DNA of 64,000 nucleotides from Vitrella brassicaformis CCMP3155. Lineage: Eukaryota > Protista > Chromerida. Under the pieces are notes generated by a model, which searched no databases, was not told the origin of the DNA, and saw only the letters and a program-made list of their open reading frames with translations. Position numbers and translations under genes: made by a program. The stretch covers positions 62,001 to 126,000 of the forward strand of contig CDMY01000061.1 of assembly GCA_001179505.1 (NCBI GenBank), written 5' to 3'. How positions within the stretch are numbered: the first letter of the stretch is position 1; the number at the start of each line of letters is the position of its first letter. This document shows positions 18,356 to 24,330 of this stretch, piece by piece.

Positions 18356-18882
18356 ATGGGGGGTAGAGAGTGAGTGGTGAGTGAATGACGGACGGGTGGC
18401 TGGAGAGTCACTCGCTTCTATATACGTGACACAATGCAGACACGTGTGTGTGTGTGTGGGACCGGGAAACATGATTGATGGATCTCGAACGATTCCCCCG
18501 GCCACCCCATCCATGCTTTGCTTTGCTTAAATCATTGAATGCATTAAGTAAAGCATTCAGGCAGTCGGCCACTCACTCGTCCGTGCGTGTTCAGTCAGGG
18601 AGAAGTACAAGGTAGGTGGGTGGGTCTATCGGCCGGTCGGTCAAAACGCCCTAGCGGCTCCATGCGACAGACAAGTTGCGGGAGGGAAGCAGACAGACAG
18701 ACAGCTAGGCTAGCCCACCAAACTGACTCATCCATCCATCCATCCATCTGAGCAGCCATGGATGCAGTATATATAATGCAGGCACGCATGACAGACAGAC
18801 AGACAGACAGGAAAAGAGCGACAAAGAGCAGTTAGTTAGTTATGTCACCCCCACCCACCTAGCTAGCCCCCCCTTGTGTGTG

Positions 18883-21800
18883 TCATCCGTTCAGTTCTTG
18901 GATGTCCTGCTGCACCTTTGATGCATCGCCCTTGGCCATCCCCTGCTCCCACTGGATGAGCCGCTCCACCCCGTTGGCCACCTCAGAAATGATGTCGGCC
19001 TCACTCGCCCCCATCGCCCGGGCGTTGGTGACGTCGAAGAGCCCCTCGCCCGACGGCTCTGGGCGCACGCGCACCCCCATGTGTGCGATGGCCGACGGGG
19101 GGAAGGACGACAGGGCGGCCAGGTGCGGCAGCTTCATAAGCAGCGACAACTTGAGACCCGTGCCCCACATCGATGGACAGCTCGTGATGTGCCTGCAGCC
19201 ATCGGCAATACACACCAGCGCAGCGCAGAGAGCATTGAGTTGAGAGACATCGGCCCGGCGAGATGTCCAGCGTACCCGAATTGTTCGTCGACAATGAATG
19301 AGGCGTCCTTGCTGGCGAGGTATGTGTCGAGTTGCGTCACGGCCTCGCGCATGAGTGTGACGACCGCCTTGACGTCACCGCCCTTCTTGATGACCATGAG
19401 CTTCAGGTGGTCGTCCTCATTCACCCAAGCCAGCACCTCACGGCTGGTCGACAGGAAGAATCCCCGACCATCAGGCCACCCCTCACCCATTTTGGTGGTC
19501 TTCAAGGCGGTGTGAGTAAGTGATTGGGAGAAGCGGGACAGACAGTGTTGAGAGCCACACACACAGAGACACAGACGACCATTGATATATGCTGCGGCAC
19601 ACATTCATTGTGTCAGTCACTGTCCGCGTAGTACCCACCTGGAAGTATGGCGACGTGGGGCTGCTGAACAGCTGCTGCTCGTCAACAAACTGCTGACGGA
19701 ACTCGGGAGACATCTCGGCCAGCCGGTGATACTGACCCGCCACCTCACCCGTCAGCCCGCTCAGCCCATCGCCCAGCAGCTGCTCCGTCGCGGCCCTTTC
19801 TTTGGCATCCATGGCCGGCGGCAGTGCAAATCCCCCGATAGATCTGTTGATTCTCAGTCTGGCGGAGAGGATGACATTGCCTGAGGGGTCCCAGCTGTCG
19901 GCCTTGATGTGTGTGGGGTCGATCAGCATCGGTGAGGGGGTCGGGTGCCGCCCATTGGGGCCGAGGCCGTGACGCTTCGCCACCACCAGGCCGTAGAAGT
20001 CGCGGAACAGACTCACACTCTCCTCGTCGCCAACGACACAACCGACTGCTGCGTCTGACGAGGGAGAGGCGTCCTCGATGCCGCACTTGGTCGCCCTGCA
20101 TGACAAAAGGAGAGGCCACGGCAGGGCAGCCTTGGCCAGTGTCTCCCCTCCCCTGTGTGGTGTGTGTGGATACAAACATTTCCAGTGTGAAGTCGTTGCG
20201 GCTTTTGACGCCCTTGTATTTCTCTGCCAGCTCTGGGTGGGCCTTCAGGATATCCCGCACGGCTTGGCCTCCCGCCGTGGCACTTGGAGCGGCGGCAACT
20301 GCACACAAGAATGGAATGCACACCAGACACAGAGGGCTGGGCTCTTTCCTCCCCCTCTGTTGCTGCAGTGTACCTCCCGCCCCCGCTCACCATCCGCAGG
20401 ACCATGGTCAGGTTCTCTGGTCTCCTTCTTCTCTATCGGCAGCTCTTTAGGCTCCTCCTTCTCTGTCGGCGCCTCCGCGTCCTTCTTGGGCTGCTCTTTG
20501 GGCGGCACCTCCACCTTCTCCACCTTCTCCGCCTTTGCCTTTGGCTCTGGTCTCTTGAACCCCCTTTGCGTGACCTTCCGCACCTCATCCTGCACGGCCG
20601 CCGACCCGCCCTCCTTGTCCAACATGGCCTCCCAGGCAATCAGCTGCTTGACGCCCTCCCCCACCACCTCGAGTATCTCGTCCTCAGTCATGCCCGCCTT
20701 GGCGATGTTGCCCACGTCGAGCGCCCCATCGGCCGCTGCATCCCCGAAGCGGCCGTCAGGTGCTGGAGAAATGTAGAGACCCAGCGCTGCCAGCAGGGCC
20801 GTGGCCTTGTCGTCTGGTTGCTGCGTGGCGCGAGGCGTCTTGGCGAGGGGCTTGAAGGCGAGCAGGGTCGCCAGGTTGGGGACGCGGAGCACCACCGAGA
20901 CATGAAGGCCGGTGCCCCAGTTGGAAGGGCTACTTGTGATGTACCTGACACATTGATGGGATGGGATGGATGGGTGGACGGAGAGAGCAGAGACACCCAT
21001 GTCCGTGCCGCCCCGACCCGACCTACCCGAATTGTTGATCGATGAGGAAGTCGGCCTTGTCTTGTTTGAGTGCGTTGCTGAGCTCGGTCATCAAGTACTG
21101 CGTTTTGGTGATGAGTGTCTTGAGGTCTGCGTTGGGCTGCAGCGCCACCACGCGCAGATGGTCGTCCTCGTTGACCCACACCAGCACGCTTTTGTCGTCG
21201 GTCATGTACAGACCACGGCCGTCAGGCCAGTCACGGCCGATGCGAGACGACTGCATCCATCACACACAGACATGAACAAACCACACACACAAGAGCGATG
21301 CGATCAGCAGGTCTATGCATAGATCTATGCGATGCGCATGTGTTGTCCAGTCAGTCCACCTGGCAGTATTGCGAATCTGGTGGAGTGAAGAGCATCTTGT
21401 CGATCACCAGGTCGTCACGGTCGGCAGCAGCCATCTTGGCCAGCGGGAAGTAGCGGCCCTTCAGCTCCCCCGTCAGCCGACACAGTGCATTGGCAACCAC
21501 CGACTCCACCTTGCGACGCTCGCCGCGCGTGCACTGCGGCGGCAGTGCAAATCCCCTGATAGATCTGTTGATCCTCAATCTGGCGGAGAGGATGACATTG
21601 CCTGAGGGGTCCCAGCTGTCGGCCTTGATGTGTGTGGGGTCGATCAGCATCGGTGAGGGGGCCGGGTGCCGCCCATTGGGGCCGAGGCCGTGACGCTTCG
21701 CCACCACAAGGCCGTAGAAGTCGCGGAACAGACTCACACTCTCCTCGTCGCCAACCACACAGCCGAGGATGCCCTCGTCTGCACAATCGAGGCCGCACTG

Positions 21801-22919
21801 GATGCACCTGAATGAAATAAACCGGACGACATCAGACAATGAGACAGCAATGAGTGTCTCTGTGGCCGTCCCCCACTCACTCACTGGTCGAAAGTGAAGC
21901 CGGTGTTCGTGACGGTGGTTCTGTATCTGTAGTAGAGGTCTTGTCTCTCCATCAGCACCTCAGCCATGATGGTGTTGGATGTCTCCAGCAGGGGGAAGTC
22001 CAACGTCGGGTCCAGATACAAAGCAGGGTTGGAACTCTTACCGCCTGGGTCAAAGGCAAAGGGCACAGCCAACCAACCACTGTGTTTGTTTGTTCGTTCC
22101 ATGGCATGCATGTCTCACCGGTAGGGATCGGCCCGCTGGGTGATGCTCCCGGCTTCGCACCCTCAACCTTCAGCTTCTCGAGGTACCGCACCTGCAGGCA
22201 GGCAGGCAGGCAGACAGACGGGAAGCGTGTGTGTGTGTGTGTGTGTGTCCCCACCCTACCTACCATGTACTCGAGTGGTTCTTTGGGTTTGTCGATGAGT
22301 ATCTGCTGCACCATGGTCTGCAGCACGGTCTGCAGGTTGTGCTCGTCGAGGTACTTCTGTGCGTTGAGGGCCGCCTGATGTCGGCTCTGCCGCCTCTCCG
22401 TCTGCTTCTTGGCCGCCGGATCGGTCAGCTGGGCGTTGATCTTGAGCGTCAGGGACTGCGCGCCGGTGCCCGCTGGGTTGGGGATGGAGATGATCTCGTC
22501 GACATTGCTTTTCTGCTTCAACTTGGCCGTGCTCAGCTGCGTGCCACCCAACTGCACACACACACACACACACATGAACCACACACACATGAACCAATCA
22601 GACAGAGAGGGGACTCTCTAGTCGTGTTGTGCACGCGACCCTTTTTGCGATGCAACATGTCTACAGCGTTTTACATACCATGGAAAGGACCTCCACTTTG
22701 AACGTGTTTGAGCTGGCCGACGGGAAGCGGAAGGGCTGTGTGCGGCAGACACAGGGACAGGACTCGATGTGCGGCAGTATATCTTAGTGCTGGTCAGTGA
22801 GTCTAGAGCTCATTGACCTCATTGAGTTTGAGTGGTGCCTGTCGTCTGGTGTCGCCGACGCGTATGGACACATAGGAGCGAGGGGGGAAGCTGTTGGCCT
22901 CAGTCACCGTCACCTCCAT
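18883..22919 (-). CDS. Two-domain ATP:guanido phosphotransferase (phosphagen kinase) fold protein with N-terminal C2-like segment and RIIa/Dpy-30-like docking motif
   Basis: ATG at 22919 (MEVTVTEANSFPPRSYVSIRVGDTRRQAPL|PFRFPS), then AQKYLDEHNLQTVLQTMVQQILIDKPKEPLEYM (D/D-like). Domain 1: GFTFDQCIQCGLD, GCVVGDEES, SARLRINRS, DWPDGRG, WVNEDDHLR, SSPSNWGTG. Lys/Glu-rich linker. Domain 2: DFTLE..KCGIED, GCVVGDEES, SARLRINRS, GWPDGRG, WVNEDDHLK, SCPSMWGTG. Stop at 18883. Confidence 0.9.
19816..21755. repeat. Near-identical ~219-bp direct repeat inside the two kinase domains (19816-20034 and 21537-21755)
   Basis: Manual alignment at offset 1721 shows about 5 mismatches; the flanking coding sequence of the two domains is strongly diverged. 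Confidence 0.95.
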
Positions 22920-23292
22920 CGCTGGACAACAAATTTAATCGACACTGGCTGGCTGGCTGGCTGGTTGGCTGCATATGAAACAACAAAGGGAGATTCCTTT
23001 CGGTGGGCCCTGTGGATCCCCTTCCCCCCTCACCTCACCAAGGGCCTCTCGAGCTTTTCGTTCACTTGGGCTGGCGCATGCAGTGCCCCTGCGTGTCTGT
23101 GGCGAGGGGCCGTCACGAAAGGATCAATACAGGGTCTCCGTCACTCAAAACCCTCCAAGAAAAGGCCAAGGGCTCTAAGGGACCTTTCTTCTCACCGCCG
23201 TTAGACGTGTCGGTCATGCTCTAACGCTAACCCAGACCGCTGTAAACATTACGGCAAGGAGGGAAGGGAAGGCTTGTTGTTGTGTTTTGAGA

Positions 23293-24330
23293 ATGAAGTC
23301 CGTCCTCGCCGCTCTCTTTGTCTATCTCTCCATCTCGCAGGGTACGCAGCGCAGCGCCATGTTTCCAGGGACTCCTAATGGGTGTTTCTTCACCGGTGTG
23401 CTACTCTGTCTGTTCTGTGTTGTGTGTGCAGGCTTCGCTGCCCCTGCATCCAGCGCGTTTGTGTCCTCTCCTGGCGTGAATGCGCTGACTCGGCTGCGTT
23501 CGCCTGCGAAGGCGGCGGCCGGTCGGCTGGACATGAGCGTGTTCAACGAAGGCGTTGAGAAGTTTGGCAAGGACTTCGCCATGCCAAAGAAGATGGGATT
23601 CGGGCCAACAGGTGGGTGAGCGCCACTCTCACTCACACATGCACTGCTCCGTCCAGATGTGCAGCGTGAGTGCTCATCTTTCTGTGTGTTTTCTGTTGGC
23701 CACTCTCTCCTACCTACCTGTTCTGTGTGTCTGTCTGGTGTCTGCATGTGCCCCCCAGCGAATGCTGAGCGCTGGAATGGTCGGCACGCGATGGCGGGGT
23801 GGGTGAGTCTGCTGTTCATTGCGTACGCCAAGTACACGGGGAACCCGATCTTTGGCTTCCCCGGCCCCGAGGAGACCTTCAAGTGGATTGCGTATGGCGG
23901 CAAGGAGGCGGAGATCCCTCTGCAGAACATCTACGTGCTGGTGTTCAACGCCCACCTGCTGATGATATCGCTCATCGCCTTCCTCTTCAACGACTCGCTG
24001 CCGGACAAGTTCTGGTTCAGCGACGGTGAGGACGACGAGGAGCCCGCGGGACTCATCCCCAGATTCGAGCCGGGACTCACAAAGGGCGCTGAAATGCTCA
24101 ACGGGTCAGTGACGGAGGGAGGGATGGAGGTCGAGAGTGGGCGGCAGATGCACACTGTGTATGAGTGGTATCGTCTTTGTGTGTGTGTGTGTTGGTTGTG
24201 TTGCGTTGTGTCCACCAGGAGGTTGGCGATGCTGGGTCTGGTAGTGCTGCTGGTGACAGCTTTCGGGACCGGCCAGTCGGTGGACCAGGTCATGGACAAG
24301 GCCCTCGGCGGCCTGCTCATTCCCAAGTAG
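23293..24330 (+). CDS. RedCAP: RedCAP (red-lineage CAB-like protein, extended LHC family), plastid-targeted, 4 exons
   Basis: Signal peptide MKSVLAALFVYLSISQ plus transit peptide with an SSAFV motif. GFGPT|ANAERWNGRHAMAGW (helix I), central hydrophobic helix, PGLTKGAEMLNG|RLAMLGLV (helix III). ERWNGRHAM preceded by G.GPT matches RedCAP as I recall it rather than LHCF/LHCR. Confidence 0.85.

What the first reader, a model, noticed from the sequence alone, without database searches (positions are those of the whole stretch)
18883..22919. C2-like + RIIa-docking + tandem phosphagen-kinase protein with two differently degenerate active sites
Seen: one ORF joins a C2-like N-terminus, a RIIa/Dpy-30-like dimerisation-docking motif (AQKYLDEHNLQTVLQTMVQQILIDKPKEPLEYM) and two complete ATP:guanido phosphotransferase folds separated by a K/E-rich linker. 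Established (Limulus arginine kinase numbering): catalysis uses Glu225 of the NEEDH box, Cys271 of CPSNLGT, and Arg124/126/229/280/309. Seen: both domains read NEDDH (E225-equivalent to D). Domain 1 has SPSNWGT (Cys to Ser, codon at 20929-20931), GLH at R280 and no RG.xGE loop. Domain 2 keeps Cys (CPSMWGT) but has DHLK and GLK (R229 and R280 to K). Both keep SARLRINRS. Inference: either a phosphagen kinase with altered chemistry or substrate, or a nucleotide-binding pseudoenzyme tethered to AKAP-type anchors (e.g. flagellar radial spoke or central pair), i.e. an anchored energy shuttle or sensor. I do not recall this architecture being described.
Basis: partly seen in the sequence, partly recalled or inferred. 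Interest (0 to 1): 0.8.

Follow-up and report, generated by a model that had tools for sequence, protein, structure and literature searches.

The report
Docked tandem degenerate creatine-type kinase
A real, transcribed 12-exon gene encodes a protein that joins a small C2-like domain, a PKA-type docking/dimerisation helix pair and two creatine-kinase-like domains that have each lost different catalytic residues. It belongs to a large, apparently undescribed protist family in which most such kinase domains look catalytically dead.

Summary
A minus-strand gene (ATG 22919, stop 18883-18885) has 12 GT-AG exons and encodes 1005 aa. Spliced contigs in two RNA-like runs and one 3.7-kb transcript scaffold (L001) confirm the junctions. 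They put the N-terminus and both kinase domains on one mRNA.

- **Residues 1-96:** fold as a C2-like beta-sandwich (VIA Z 9-9.7).
- **Residues 117-157:** a RIIa/DPY-30-type docking domain. The window's own sequence is sub-threshold in Pfam. The family profile is clear (FAP385 E 5e-8, AK8, DPY30, PKA-RI), and so is the Perkinsus relative (28 bits).
- **Kinase domains:** both are complete and creatine-kinase-clade. They are sister copies with identical intron positions and a 230-nt gene-conversion tract.
- **Domain 1:** lacks the C283, R292 and R320 equivalents.
- **Domain 2:** has K at R236 and at R292.
- **Both domains:** have D at E232 and lack both adenine-contacting histidines.

The architecture is not unique. 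32 of the 150 best representative clusters share the same N-terminal module followed by 1-4 kinase domains. Only 5 of their 78 domains keep all seven core residues.

Best reading: an anchored pseudo-phosphagen kinase, or at best a feeble one. It is plausibly axonemal, but its location is untested. I found no paper describing it. An earlier scan note reports a similar triple-domain paralogue elsewhere in this genome.

The parts
18883..22919 (-). Coding region of the 12-exon gene (1005 aa). Exons: 22919-22818, 22735-22679, 22551-22264, 22191-22119, 22044-21885, 21807-21360, 21250-21027, 20944-20391, 20298-20178, 20095-19639, 19499-19276, 19192-18883.
   Evidence: All introns are GT-AG and the frame is continuous. 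Spliced contigs are seen in X1 and X2 only. L001 matches every exon.
22920..23190 (-). 5' UTR, with one intron at 22971-23033. An in-frame stop lies at 22935-22937, just upstream of the ATG.
   Evidence: L001 1-157 matches 23190-23034 and L001 156-308 matches 22970-22818. Frame-0 translation.
22423..22919 (-). C2-like beta-sandwich, residues 1-96 (exons 1, 2 and the start of exon 3).
   Evidence: AF2 model m21cc678beceb has pLDDT about 90 over this region and 8 strands. Foldseek hits are almost all C2 domains. VIA-align gives Z 9.0-9.7, rmsd 2.3-3.3 A and 86-100 residues aligned over model residues 1-96/98. There is no Pfam C2 hit.
22168..22362 (-). RIIa/DPY-30-type docking-dimerisation (D/D) helix pair, residues 117-157. 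It is split by the intron at 22192-22263.
   Evidence: Own sequence: Dpy-30 E 0.008, RIIa E 0.017, Tex55 C-terminus E 0.008, all on the same segment. Family profile A1 against the PDB: FAP385 4.9e-8, AK8 1e-6, DPY30 3e-6, PKA-RI-alpha 2e-5. AF2 helices at 126-140 and 145-160. P142 is invariant and P145 nearly invariant, flanking the inter-helix loop.
20596..22006 (-). Phosphagen-kinase domain 1 (about residues 187-567; exons 5-8). Motifs: RLR, NEDDHLR, SPSNWGTGLH. It has no R320 equivalent and carries a 20-residue insertion before the flexible loop.
   Evidence: Pfam PF02807 and PF00217. Local HMM envelope. Key columns. PDB alignments.
20929..20931 (-). Ser codon at the catalytic Cys position (C271 in arginine kinase, C283 in creatine kinase) of domain 1.
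   Evidence: Exon 8 in-frame translation YITSSPSNWGT, aligned to CPSNLGT of TK and CK.
20391..20595 (-). K/E/P-rich inter-domain linker (KRPEPKAKAEKVEKVEVPPKEQPKKDAEAPTEKEEPKELPIEKKETREPDHGPAD).
   Evidence: Translation. It lies between the two HMM envelopes.
18910..20394 (-). Phosphagen-kinase domain 2 (about residues 635-997; exons 9-12). Motifs: RLR, NEDDHLK, CPSMWGTGLK, VRVRP. The R320 equivalent is kept and the flexible loop is 5 residues shorter.
   Evidence: Pfam. PDB: CK-B 222 bits against Limulus AK 142 bits. Key columns.
21537..21766 (-). Gene-conversion tract, copy in exon 6 (domain 1).
   Evidence: A 230-nt direct repeat, 97% identical to 19816-20045. Flanking exon sequence is only 50-70% identical. 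All short-read assemblies break here.
19816..20045 (-). Gene-conversion tract, copy in exon 10 (domain 2).

Best explanation
The gene encodes an anchored tandem pseudo-phosphagen kinase, or at best a very weak one.

Shown:
- One mRNA encodes a C2-like beta-sandwich, an R1D2/DPY-30-type D/D helix pair and two complete creatine-kinase-clade domains.
- The two domains arose by a lineage-specific tandem duplication. They are sister domains with identical intron phases, and they still exchange sequence by gene conversion.
- Both active sites are degraded, in different ways.

Inferred:
- The D/D domain dimerises and docks the protein on an amphipathic helix of an AKAP-like scaffold.
- By analogy with AK8/FAP385, AK7, NME5 and algal enolase, that scaffold is most plausibly axonemal (radial spoke or central apparatus) in a flagellate stage.
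- The kinase folds serve there as structural or ligand-sensing modules rather than as an ATP buffer.
- The ancestral family member was probably an active, docked creatine-type kinase. A few relatives keep the full residue set.
For: Gene and transcript.

Folds.

D/D domain. The family has the two loop-flanking prolines that PMC8339350 gives as the R1D2 hallmark.

Degeneracy (creatine-kinase numbering):
- Domain 1 keeps 3 of 7 core residues (R130, R132, E232, R236, C283, R292, R320). Domain 2 keeps 4 of 7.
- H191 and H296 are K/V in domain 1 and Q/L in domain 2.
- In the family, 5 of 78 domains and 4 of 31 proteins keep the full core. R134, H234 and G288 stay (near-)invariant, which is the pattern of a conserved fold without conserved chemistry.

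Sister domains: tree support 99.

Axonemal analogy:
- The best PDB sequence matches of the D/D profile are radial-spoke or axoneme chains.
- FAP385 resembles the AK8 N-terminus at the spoke neck (PMC12399478).
- D/D proteins are lost in lineages without flagella (PMC8339350).
- A creatine kinase is among the genes upregulated in free-swimming Amoebophrya dinospores (PMC6176090). That gene was not shown to belong to this family.
Against: - No activity, nucleotide-binding or localisation data exist.
- Domain 2's changes are conservative (E to D, two R to K), and it keeps Cys, R130, R132 and the R320 equivalent, so residual or altered activity is possible.
- The window's own D/D segment is below Pfam's threshold.
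- D/D domains also act outside cilia, for example DPY30 in COMPASS.
- A C2-like domain could instead point to membranes or the cell cortex.
- The effect of each substitution on activity rests on my memory of the CK/AK mutagenesis literature, which I did not re-read here.
Confidence: 0.55

Rival explanations
1. It is an active, anchored phosphagen kinase with altered chemistry or substrate. Domain 2 would work as the receiving end of a phosphagen shuttle at the anchoring site, and domain 1 would be a regulatory partner.
For: Domain 2 keeps C283, S285, R130, R132, R134, the R320 equivalent, E231, D233 and H234, and its substitutions are conservative. The whole fold is intact (PF00217 positions 8-201 of 203). 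Some family members keep all seven core residues: P0043 (both domains), P0119, P0088 and P0015 domain 3. The Perkinsus relative has highly canonical N-terminal halves. Other contiguous multi-domain kinases are solved enzymes (4rf6, 4wo8), and both of their domains are active as far as I recall.
Against: E232D, R236K, R292K, H191Q and H296L occur together in domain 2. The flexible loop is shortened by 5 residues. From memory, single replacements of these residues in CK or AK cost orders of magnitude in activity. The family as a whole shows no constraint on catalytic positions.
Confidence: 0.25
2. It is a non-flagellar scaffold. The C2-like domain targets membranes or the cell cortex, and the D/D domain only dimerises the protein. 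The kinase-like domains would bind a partner or metabolite unrelated to motility.
For: The C2 fold is typical of membrane or protein targeting. D/D domains occur outside cilia (DPY30/COMPASS entries). An earlier scan note (s1-226996, untested) reports another metabolic enzyme with such a docking domain in this genome, which suggests a general anchoring cassette.
Against: The best D/D matches are axonemal. The family is found in flagellate myzozoans: Perkinsus and Polykrikos. The C2-like domain is short, about 96 aa, and I did not test it for calcium-binding residues. C2-like domains also occur in axonemal chains (9nw3_3A Z 9.3; 9ijj_l).
Confidence: 0.15
3. It is a decaying duplicate (a transcribed pseudogene), or the fusion is a gene-model or assembly artefact.
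For: Catalytic residues are lost. MMETSP ORF P0003 joins the N-terminus directly to domain 2, and assemblies break at the internal repeat.
Against: The gene has 1005 codons with no stop across 12 correctly spliced exons. The genome and DNA-run contigs are colinear. Fold-defining residues are conserved. The architecture recurs in 32 representative clusters. P0003 is most simply explained by assembly collapse through the 230-nt repeat, because the jump has no splice sites.
Confidence: 0.05

Closest known systems
Perkinsus chesapeaki protein annotated 'Creatine kinase S-type, mitochondrial, partial' (P0158, NCBI)
   Same: It has the same N-terminal module, 48% identical over 94% of residues 1-165. 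Its Dpy-30 hit is above Pfam's threshold at the same position. Repeated creatine-kinase-type domains follow.
   Different: Its kinase N-terminal halves are canonical. The model holds five N-terminal halves and no catalytic halves, so it is probably a faulty gene model, and its active sites could not be compared. The annotation is automatic, and I found no paper on it.
Axonemal D/D-tethered nucleotide enzymes: adenylate kinase 8 / FAP385, AK7, NME5 (RSP23/NDK5), Chlamydomonas central-apparatus enolase
   Same: An RIIa/DPY-30-type docking domain is fused to an energy-metabolism fold. These are the best PDB matches of the family's D/D profile. The spoke-neck role of FAP385/AK8 is described in PMC12399478. 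NDK5 acts through its structure rather than through canonical activity (abstract of PMC5662260, listed).
   Different: The enzyme fold here is a phosphagen kinase, which is not among the D/D partners catalogued in PMC8339350. A C2-like domain precedes the D/D domain. Axonemal location is not shown.
Contiguous multi-domain phosphagen kinases: invertebrate flagellar creatine kinase (three domains; P0002-like, P0151 'creatine kinase, flagellar-like'), Anthopleura two-domain arginine kinase (4rf6), Schistosoma two-domain taurocyamine kinase (4wo8)
   Same: Complete kinase domains are repeated in one polypeptide. Exon 6 is 44-45% identical to the three-domain CK type. These are the top PDB hits.
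   Different: P0002 shows the canonical motifs in all three domains, and the 4rf6 and 4wo8 alignments show canonical CPSNLGT..R motifs. As far as I recall they have no D/D or C2-like module and anchor by other means, such as myristoylation in sea-urchin flagellar CK. Here both domains are degenerate.
Canonical single-domain creatine-type kinase P0066 (unnamed, source unknown)
   Same: It is the nearest neighbour of the window's two domains in the tree and shares the unusual Trp in CPSNWGT.
   Different: It has a single domain, a hydrophobic N-terminus instead of the C2 and D/D modules, and the full catalytic set (STRVRTGRS, NEEDHIR, CPSNWGTGLR, LQRRGT).

Membership tests
ATP:guanido phosphotransferase (phosphagen kinase) superfamily, Pfam PF02807 + PF00217 | N-terminal helical domain followed by the C-terminal catalytic fold, matched end to end. 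| tested here: met
   P0001: PF00217 E 2e-78 in two stretches (best at profile positions 8-201 of 203), plus PF02807. P0003: PF02807 positions 3-65 of 67. Exon-wise hits.
ATP:guanido phosphotransferase (phosphagen kinase) superfamily, Pfam PF02807 + PF00217 | Catalytic and phosphate-binding set R130, R132, E232, R236, C283, R292, R320 (CK numbering). This corresponds to AK R124, R126, E225, R229, C271, R280, R309. | tested here: not met
   Domain 1 keeps 3 of 7 (E to D, C to S, R292 to H, R320 absent). Domain 2 keeps 4 of 7 (E to D, R236 to K, R292 to K).
ATP:guanido phosphotransferase (phosphagen kinase) superfamily, Pfam PF02807 + PF00217 | Adenine-contacting histidines (AK H185/H284, CK H191/H296; role as stated in PMC12467219). 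| tested here: not met
   They are K and V in domain 1, and Q and L in domain 2. They are lost in nearly the whole family. Role of the residues.
ATP:guanido phosphotransferase (phosphagen kinase) superfamily, Pfam PF02807 + PF00217 | Reversible phosphotransfer between ATP and a guanidino substrate. | not testable with these tools
   Needs an enzyme assay.
Creatine-kinase clade (CK/GK/LK) as opposed to typical arginine kinases | Closer in sequence to CK-group enzymes than to arthropod-type AKs. | tested here: met
   Domain 2 scores: CK-B 222 bits, GK 170, LK 163, Limulus AK 142. The best non-self full-library hits to exon 6 are CK-type multi-domain proteins at 44-45% identity. Substrate cannot be inferred from this.
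RIIa / DPY-30 docking-dimerisation (D/D) domain | Pfam Dpy-30 (PF05186) or RIIa (PF02197) hit above the gathering score. | tested here: not met
   Own sequence: Dpy-30 16.3 bits against a cut-off of 22, RIIa 15.2 against 22.4. Relatives: 18 of 32 hit Dpy-30 (best E 7e-7) and 13 of 32 hit RIIa. P0158 scores 28.4 bits. Family profile against the PDB: E 5e-8. The claim therefore rests on homology to members that do pass.
RIIa / DPY-30 docking-dimerisation (D/D) domain | Helix-loop-helix with prolines at both ends of the inter-helix loop (R1D2 hallmark, PMC8339350). | tested here: met
   The own loop reads KPKEP. P142 is invariant and P145 is conserved in at least 90% of the family. AF2 helices at 126-140 and 145-160 with pLDDT above 90. 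Criterion quoted.
RIIa / DPY-30 docking-dimerisation (D/D) domain | Dimerisation and binding of an amphipathic (AKAP-type) helix. | not testable with these tools
   Needs SEC-MALS or a pull-down.
C2 domain | Eight-stranded beta-sandwich of C2 topology. | tested here: met
   AF2 gives 8 strands with pLDDT about 90. VIA Z 9.0-9.7 and rmsd 2.3-3.3 A over residues 1-96/98. Nearly all top rows are C2 domains. Foldseek E-values are only 4e-3 to 5e-2.
C2 domain | Sequence-profile membership (Pfam C2 families). | tested here: not met
   The own sequence gives no hit. One of 32 relatives gives a weak C2_GRDP hit, E 0.013.
C2 domain | Calcium-binding aspartate cluster in the top loops. | not tested
   The domain is short, about 96 aa against about 125 for the matched C2 chains. 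No residue-level structural comparison was made.
Contiguous multi-domain phosphagen kinases | Two or more complete kinase domains in one polypeptide, made by tandem duplication. | tested here: met
   Two full HMM envelopes. Intron positions and phases are identical in both copies. The domains are sisters at support 99.

The most novel reading that the evidence does not exclude
The window's gene is one member of a myzozoan-wide family (Perkinsus, dinoflagellates and this alga) of C2 + D/D-anchored phosphagen pseudokinases. On this reading, the creatine-kinase fold has been recruited, domain by domain, as a non-catalytic structural or sensing component of the axoneme. That would be a pseudoenzyme branch of the phosphagen-kinase superfamily and a new class of D/D-docked ciliary protein.
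Probability: 0.35. Interest if true: 0.72.

Novelty: new variant of a known kind. Interest (0 to 1): 0.6.

Why it matters
Phosphagen kinases are usually treated as soluble or membrane-tethered ATP buffers. D/D domains are known to dock adenylate kinases, NDP kinases and enolase in axonemes.

A family that puts creatine-kinase folds on the same docking module extends the idea of anchored energy enzymes to a third enzyme class. It also extends it to alveolates, where phosphagen systems are almost unstudied.

If most of these domains are truly inactive, they give a natural series, from 7 of 7 down to 0 of 7 catalytic residues. Such a series could show how an enzyme fold becomes a structural part.

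The finding also flags automatic 'creatine kinase' annotations in Perkinsus and related genomes as unreliable for inferring metabolism.

Tried and rejected
- **Exon-by-exon Pfam.** It missed Dpy-30/RIIa because the motif is split by the intron at 22192-22263. This was resolved with the public ORF P0003.
- **Word-indexed homologue search with P0001.** It returned only the protein itself, P0003 and a nemertean flagellar-like CK. It is too insensitive for this divergent family. The HMMER search of representatives was what revealed the family.
- **Atlas feature search of the N-terminal module.** It gave only borderline (0.90) unnamed clusters, with Ciliophora the commonest taxon on record. I did not use it.
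- **Foldseek alone.** No hit at E <= 1e-3. The C2 assignment rests on the consistency of the hit list and on the VIA Z-scores.
- **Literature searches.** I searched for phosphagen, creatine or guanido kinase together with RIIa, Dpy-30, alveolate names or Perkinsus. None gave a description of this architecture. The library holds open-access papers only.
- **Search by mutant names.** It returned no relevant CK or AK mutagenesis papers, so the effects of the mutations are given from memory.
- **The look-up of encoding contigs for P0066.** No record, so I could not show that the same organism has a canonical kinase.
- **P0152.** It comes from other samples than L001, so a four-domain paralogue in the same organism was not shown.
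- **Rejected: P0003 as a real N-terminus + domain 2 isoform.** The jump lies inside the 230-nt repeat and has no splice sites.
- **Rejected: arginine-kinase identity.**
- **Rejected: pseudogene.**


Full report
**1. What is in the sequence**

The finding's coordinates run from the stop codon (18883-18885) to the ATG (22917-22919) of a minus-strand eukaryotic gene. Three-frame translation and inspection of splice sites give 12 exons, all with GT-AG introns. They sum to 3018 nt, or 1005 aa.

The intron positions and phases in the two kinase domains are identical: exon boundaries 5/6, 6/7 and 7/8 correspond to 9/10, 10/11 and 11/12. This is the signature of a tandem duplication of an already intron-bearing unit.

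**2. Is the model transcribed as one unit?**

Yes.

- Of the runs that hold this DNA, X1 and X2 carry contigs that skip the introns 19192-19274, 19500-19638, 21251-21359, about 21808-21884, about 22045-22118 and 22736-22817. The skipped parts have CT..AC ends on the plus strand. X3 and X4 are colinear with the genome.
- One X1 contig of 1115 nt links the 5'UTR and exons 1-6.
- A JGI transcript scaffold, L001 (3723 nt), found through the public ORF P0001, matches all 12 exons at exactly my junctions. It also shows a 5'UTR intron (22971-23033) and the 3'UTR to 18517. Its only defect is 100 N inside exon 6.
- That gap, and all the contig breaks, fall on a 230-nt direct repeat (21537-21766 and 19816-20045, 97% identical). 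The rest of the paired exons is only 50-70% identical. I read this as gene conversion between the two domains.
- The same repeat explains MMETSP ORF P0003. It joins the N-terminus to domain 2 with no splice sites at the jump, so it is most simply an assembly collapse.

P0003:1-248 and P0001 (the window's residues 250-1005) gave me referenced sequence for the whole product.

**3. The parts**

*(a) Residues 1-96.*
- They have no Pfam hit.
- An AlphaFold model built on a 32-member alignment has mean pLDDT 83, about 90 in this part. It shows an eight-stranded beta-sandwich.
- Foldseek's list is almost entirely C2 domains, but at weak E-values of 4e-3 to 5e-2.
- VIA-align gives Z 9.0-9.7, rmsd 2.3-3.3 A and 86-100 aligned residues over model residues 1-96/98.
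- 'C2-like' is therefore justified as a fold, not as sequence-family membership.

*(b) Residues 117-157* (AQKYLDEHNLQTVLQTMVQQILIDKPKEPLEYM|VRYLEKL, split by an intron).
- On their own they hit Dpy-30 (E 0.008), RIIa (0.017) and the Tex55 C-terminus (0.008). All three fall on the same segment and all are below the gathering score.
- At family level the assignment is solid. 18 of 32 relatives hit Dpy-30 (best E 7e-7) and 13 of 32 hit RIIa.
- The Perkinsus relative passes the threshold at the same position (28.4 bits).
- The family profile finds FAP385 (4.9e-8), adenylate kinase 8, DPY30, the PKA RI-alpha D/D domain, EFCAB10, algal enolase and NME5 in the PDB.
- The two prolines flanking the inter-helix loop are invariant or nearly so. 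PMC8339350 gives this as the hallmark of the RI-like (R1D2) group, which includes AK8, TEX55, EFCAB10 and enolase.

*(c) Two complete phosphagen-kinase domains* (Pfam), separated by a K/E/P-rich linker.
- They resemble creatine-kinase-group enzymes more than typical arginine kinases. Scores for domain 2 are CK-B 222 bits, GK 170, LK 163 and Limulus AK 142. Exon 6 is 44-45% identical to three-domain CK-type proteins.

**4. Active sites**

I aligned all domains to a local HMM and checked against PDB alignments. In creatine-kinase numbering:

| Position | Domain 1 | Domain 2 |
|---|---|---|
| R130, R132, R134 | kept | kept |
| E231, D233, H234 | kept | kept |
| E232 | D | D |
| R236 | R | K |
| C283 | S | C |
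| R292 | H | K |
| R320 | none (20-residue insertion instead) | R, with the loop 5 residues shorter |
| H191 / H296 (adenine contacts) | K / V | Q / L |

The role of the two histidines, and of the Arg124/126/229/280 cluster, is as stated in PMC12467219.

From memory, not re-read here: single replacements of these residues in CK or AK (E232D, C283S or C271S, Arg to Lys) cost from tens to many thousands of fold in activity. The combination therefore makes domain 1 almost certainly inactive, and domain 2 at best feeble.

**5. It is a family**

- The HMMER search of 1.84 billion representatives with exon 6 gave 951 hits.
- Among the best 150, 32 carry the same N-terminal module, at 24-37% identity to the window's. 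It is followed by one to four kinase domains.
- Known sources include the dinoflagellate Polykrikos kofoidii. A further word-indexed search added Perkinsus chesapeaki, annotated 'creatine kinase S-type, mitochondrial, partial'.
- Across 78 domains of 31 proteins, only 5 domains in 4 proteins keep all seven core residues. R292 survives in 22 of 78 and R132 in 27 of 78. R134 (77/78), H234 (78/78) and G288 (78/78) are fixed. This is the pattern expected when the fold, not the chemistry, is under selection.
- In a FastTree of 98 domains the window's two domains are sisters (support 99). Together with the canonical single-domain P0066 they attach between the canonical CK-type group and the 71-domain family clade. 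This is compatible with a basal position in the family. The tree is unrooted and quick, so I do not lean on it.

**6. Mechanism**

Shown: the architecture, its transcription, the duplication and conversion history, and the degraded catalytic sites.

Inferred: dimerisation and docking through the D/D domain to an amphipathic helix, and an axonemal address. The address is argued from four points:
- The D/D profile's best matches are axonemal.
- FAP385 corresponds to the AK8 N-terminus at the radial-spoke neck.
- D/D proteins are lost in lineages without flagella.
- A creatine kinase is among the genes upregulated in swimming Amoebophrya dinospores. That gene was not shown to be of this family.

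The neighbouring gene on the plus strand is a chlorophyll a/b-binding protein, so the organism is photosynthetic.

**7. Novelty**

I found no paper that combines phosphagen, creatine, arginine or guanido kinase with RIIa or Dpy-30 as a fusion, or that treats such kinases in alveolates. The D/D superfamily survey lists no phosphagen kinase among D/D partners. Only open-access papers were searched.

The logic of the fusion, a D/D-docked energy enzyme or pseudoenzyme, is known. So are contiguous kinase domains. I therefore class it as a new variant of a known kind.

Earlier notes of this scan report a triple-domain paralogue and a D/D-aspartate aminotransferase fusion elsewhere in this genome. 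I did not test either.

Noticed in passing
window 23287-24330 (+): The neighbouring, divergently oriented gene encodes a chlorophyll a/b-binding (LHC-family) protein. PF00504 scores 23.1 bits on ORF 23659-24327, and the ERWNGRHAMAG and AEMLNG motifs are visible. The genome therefore belongs to a photosynthetic organism.
   Followed up: partly
window 21537-21766 and 19816-20045: A 230-nt tract is 97% identical between exons 6 and 10, while the flanks are 50-70% identical. This points to ongoing gene conversion between the two kinase domains. It breaks all short-read assemblies of the locus. It also explains the 100-N gap in L001 and the collapsed MMETSP ORF P0003.
   Followed up: yes
window 21662: Run X1 reads T where the genome has C. 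On the coding strand this turns RHPAPSPM into RHPTPSPM, which is the domain-2 version. It could be an allele or strain difference, or a contig assembled from the other repeat copy.
   Followed up: no
window 22971-23033: There is an intron in the 5' UTR. L001 joins 23034 to 22970.
   Followed up: partly
P0004, P0006 (about 1700-1800 aa) and P0018 (1084 aa): The hits include other unusual phosphagen-kinase architectures. One has a PH domain plus four kinase domains, several with degenerate motifs such as CPSRVGSCVT. Another has a rhomboid domain plus two kinase domains. Their sources are unknown.
   Followed up: no
P0158 (Perkinsus chesapeaki, NCBI): The deposited model strings together five N-terminal kinase half-domains with no catalytic halves. 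It is probably a mis-predicted gene over a tandem multi-domain locus. The name 'mitochondrial S-type creatine kinase' looks like a transfer by similarity.
   Followed up: partly
window 22186-22258, 22547-22583, 18700-18850: Introns and the 3' flank carry (CA)n/(GT)n and CTGC/GGAT-type microsatellites. Many contigs of all runs end or pile up there.
   Followed up: no
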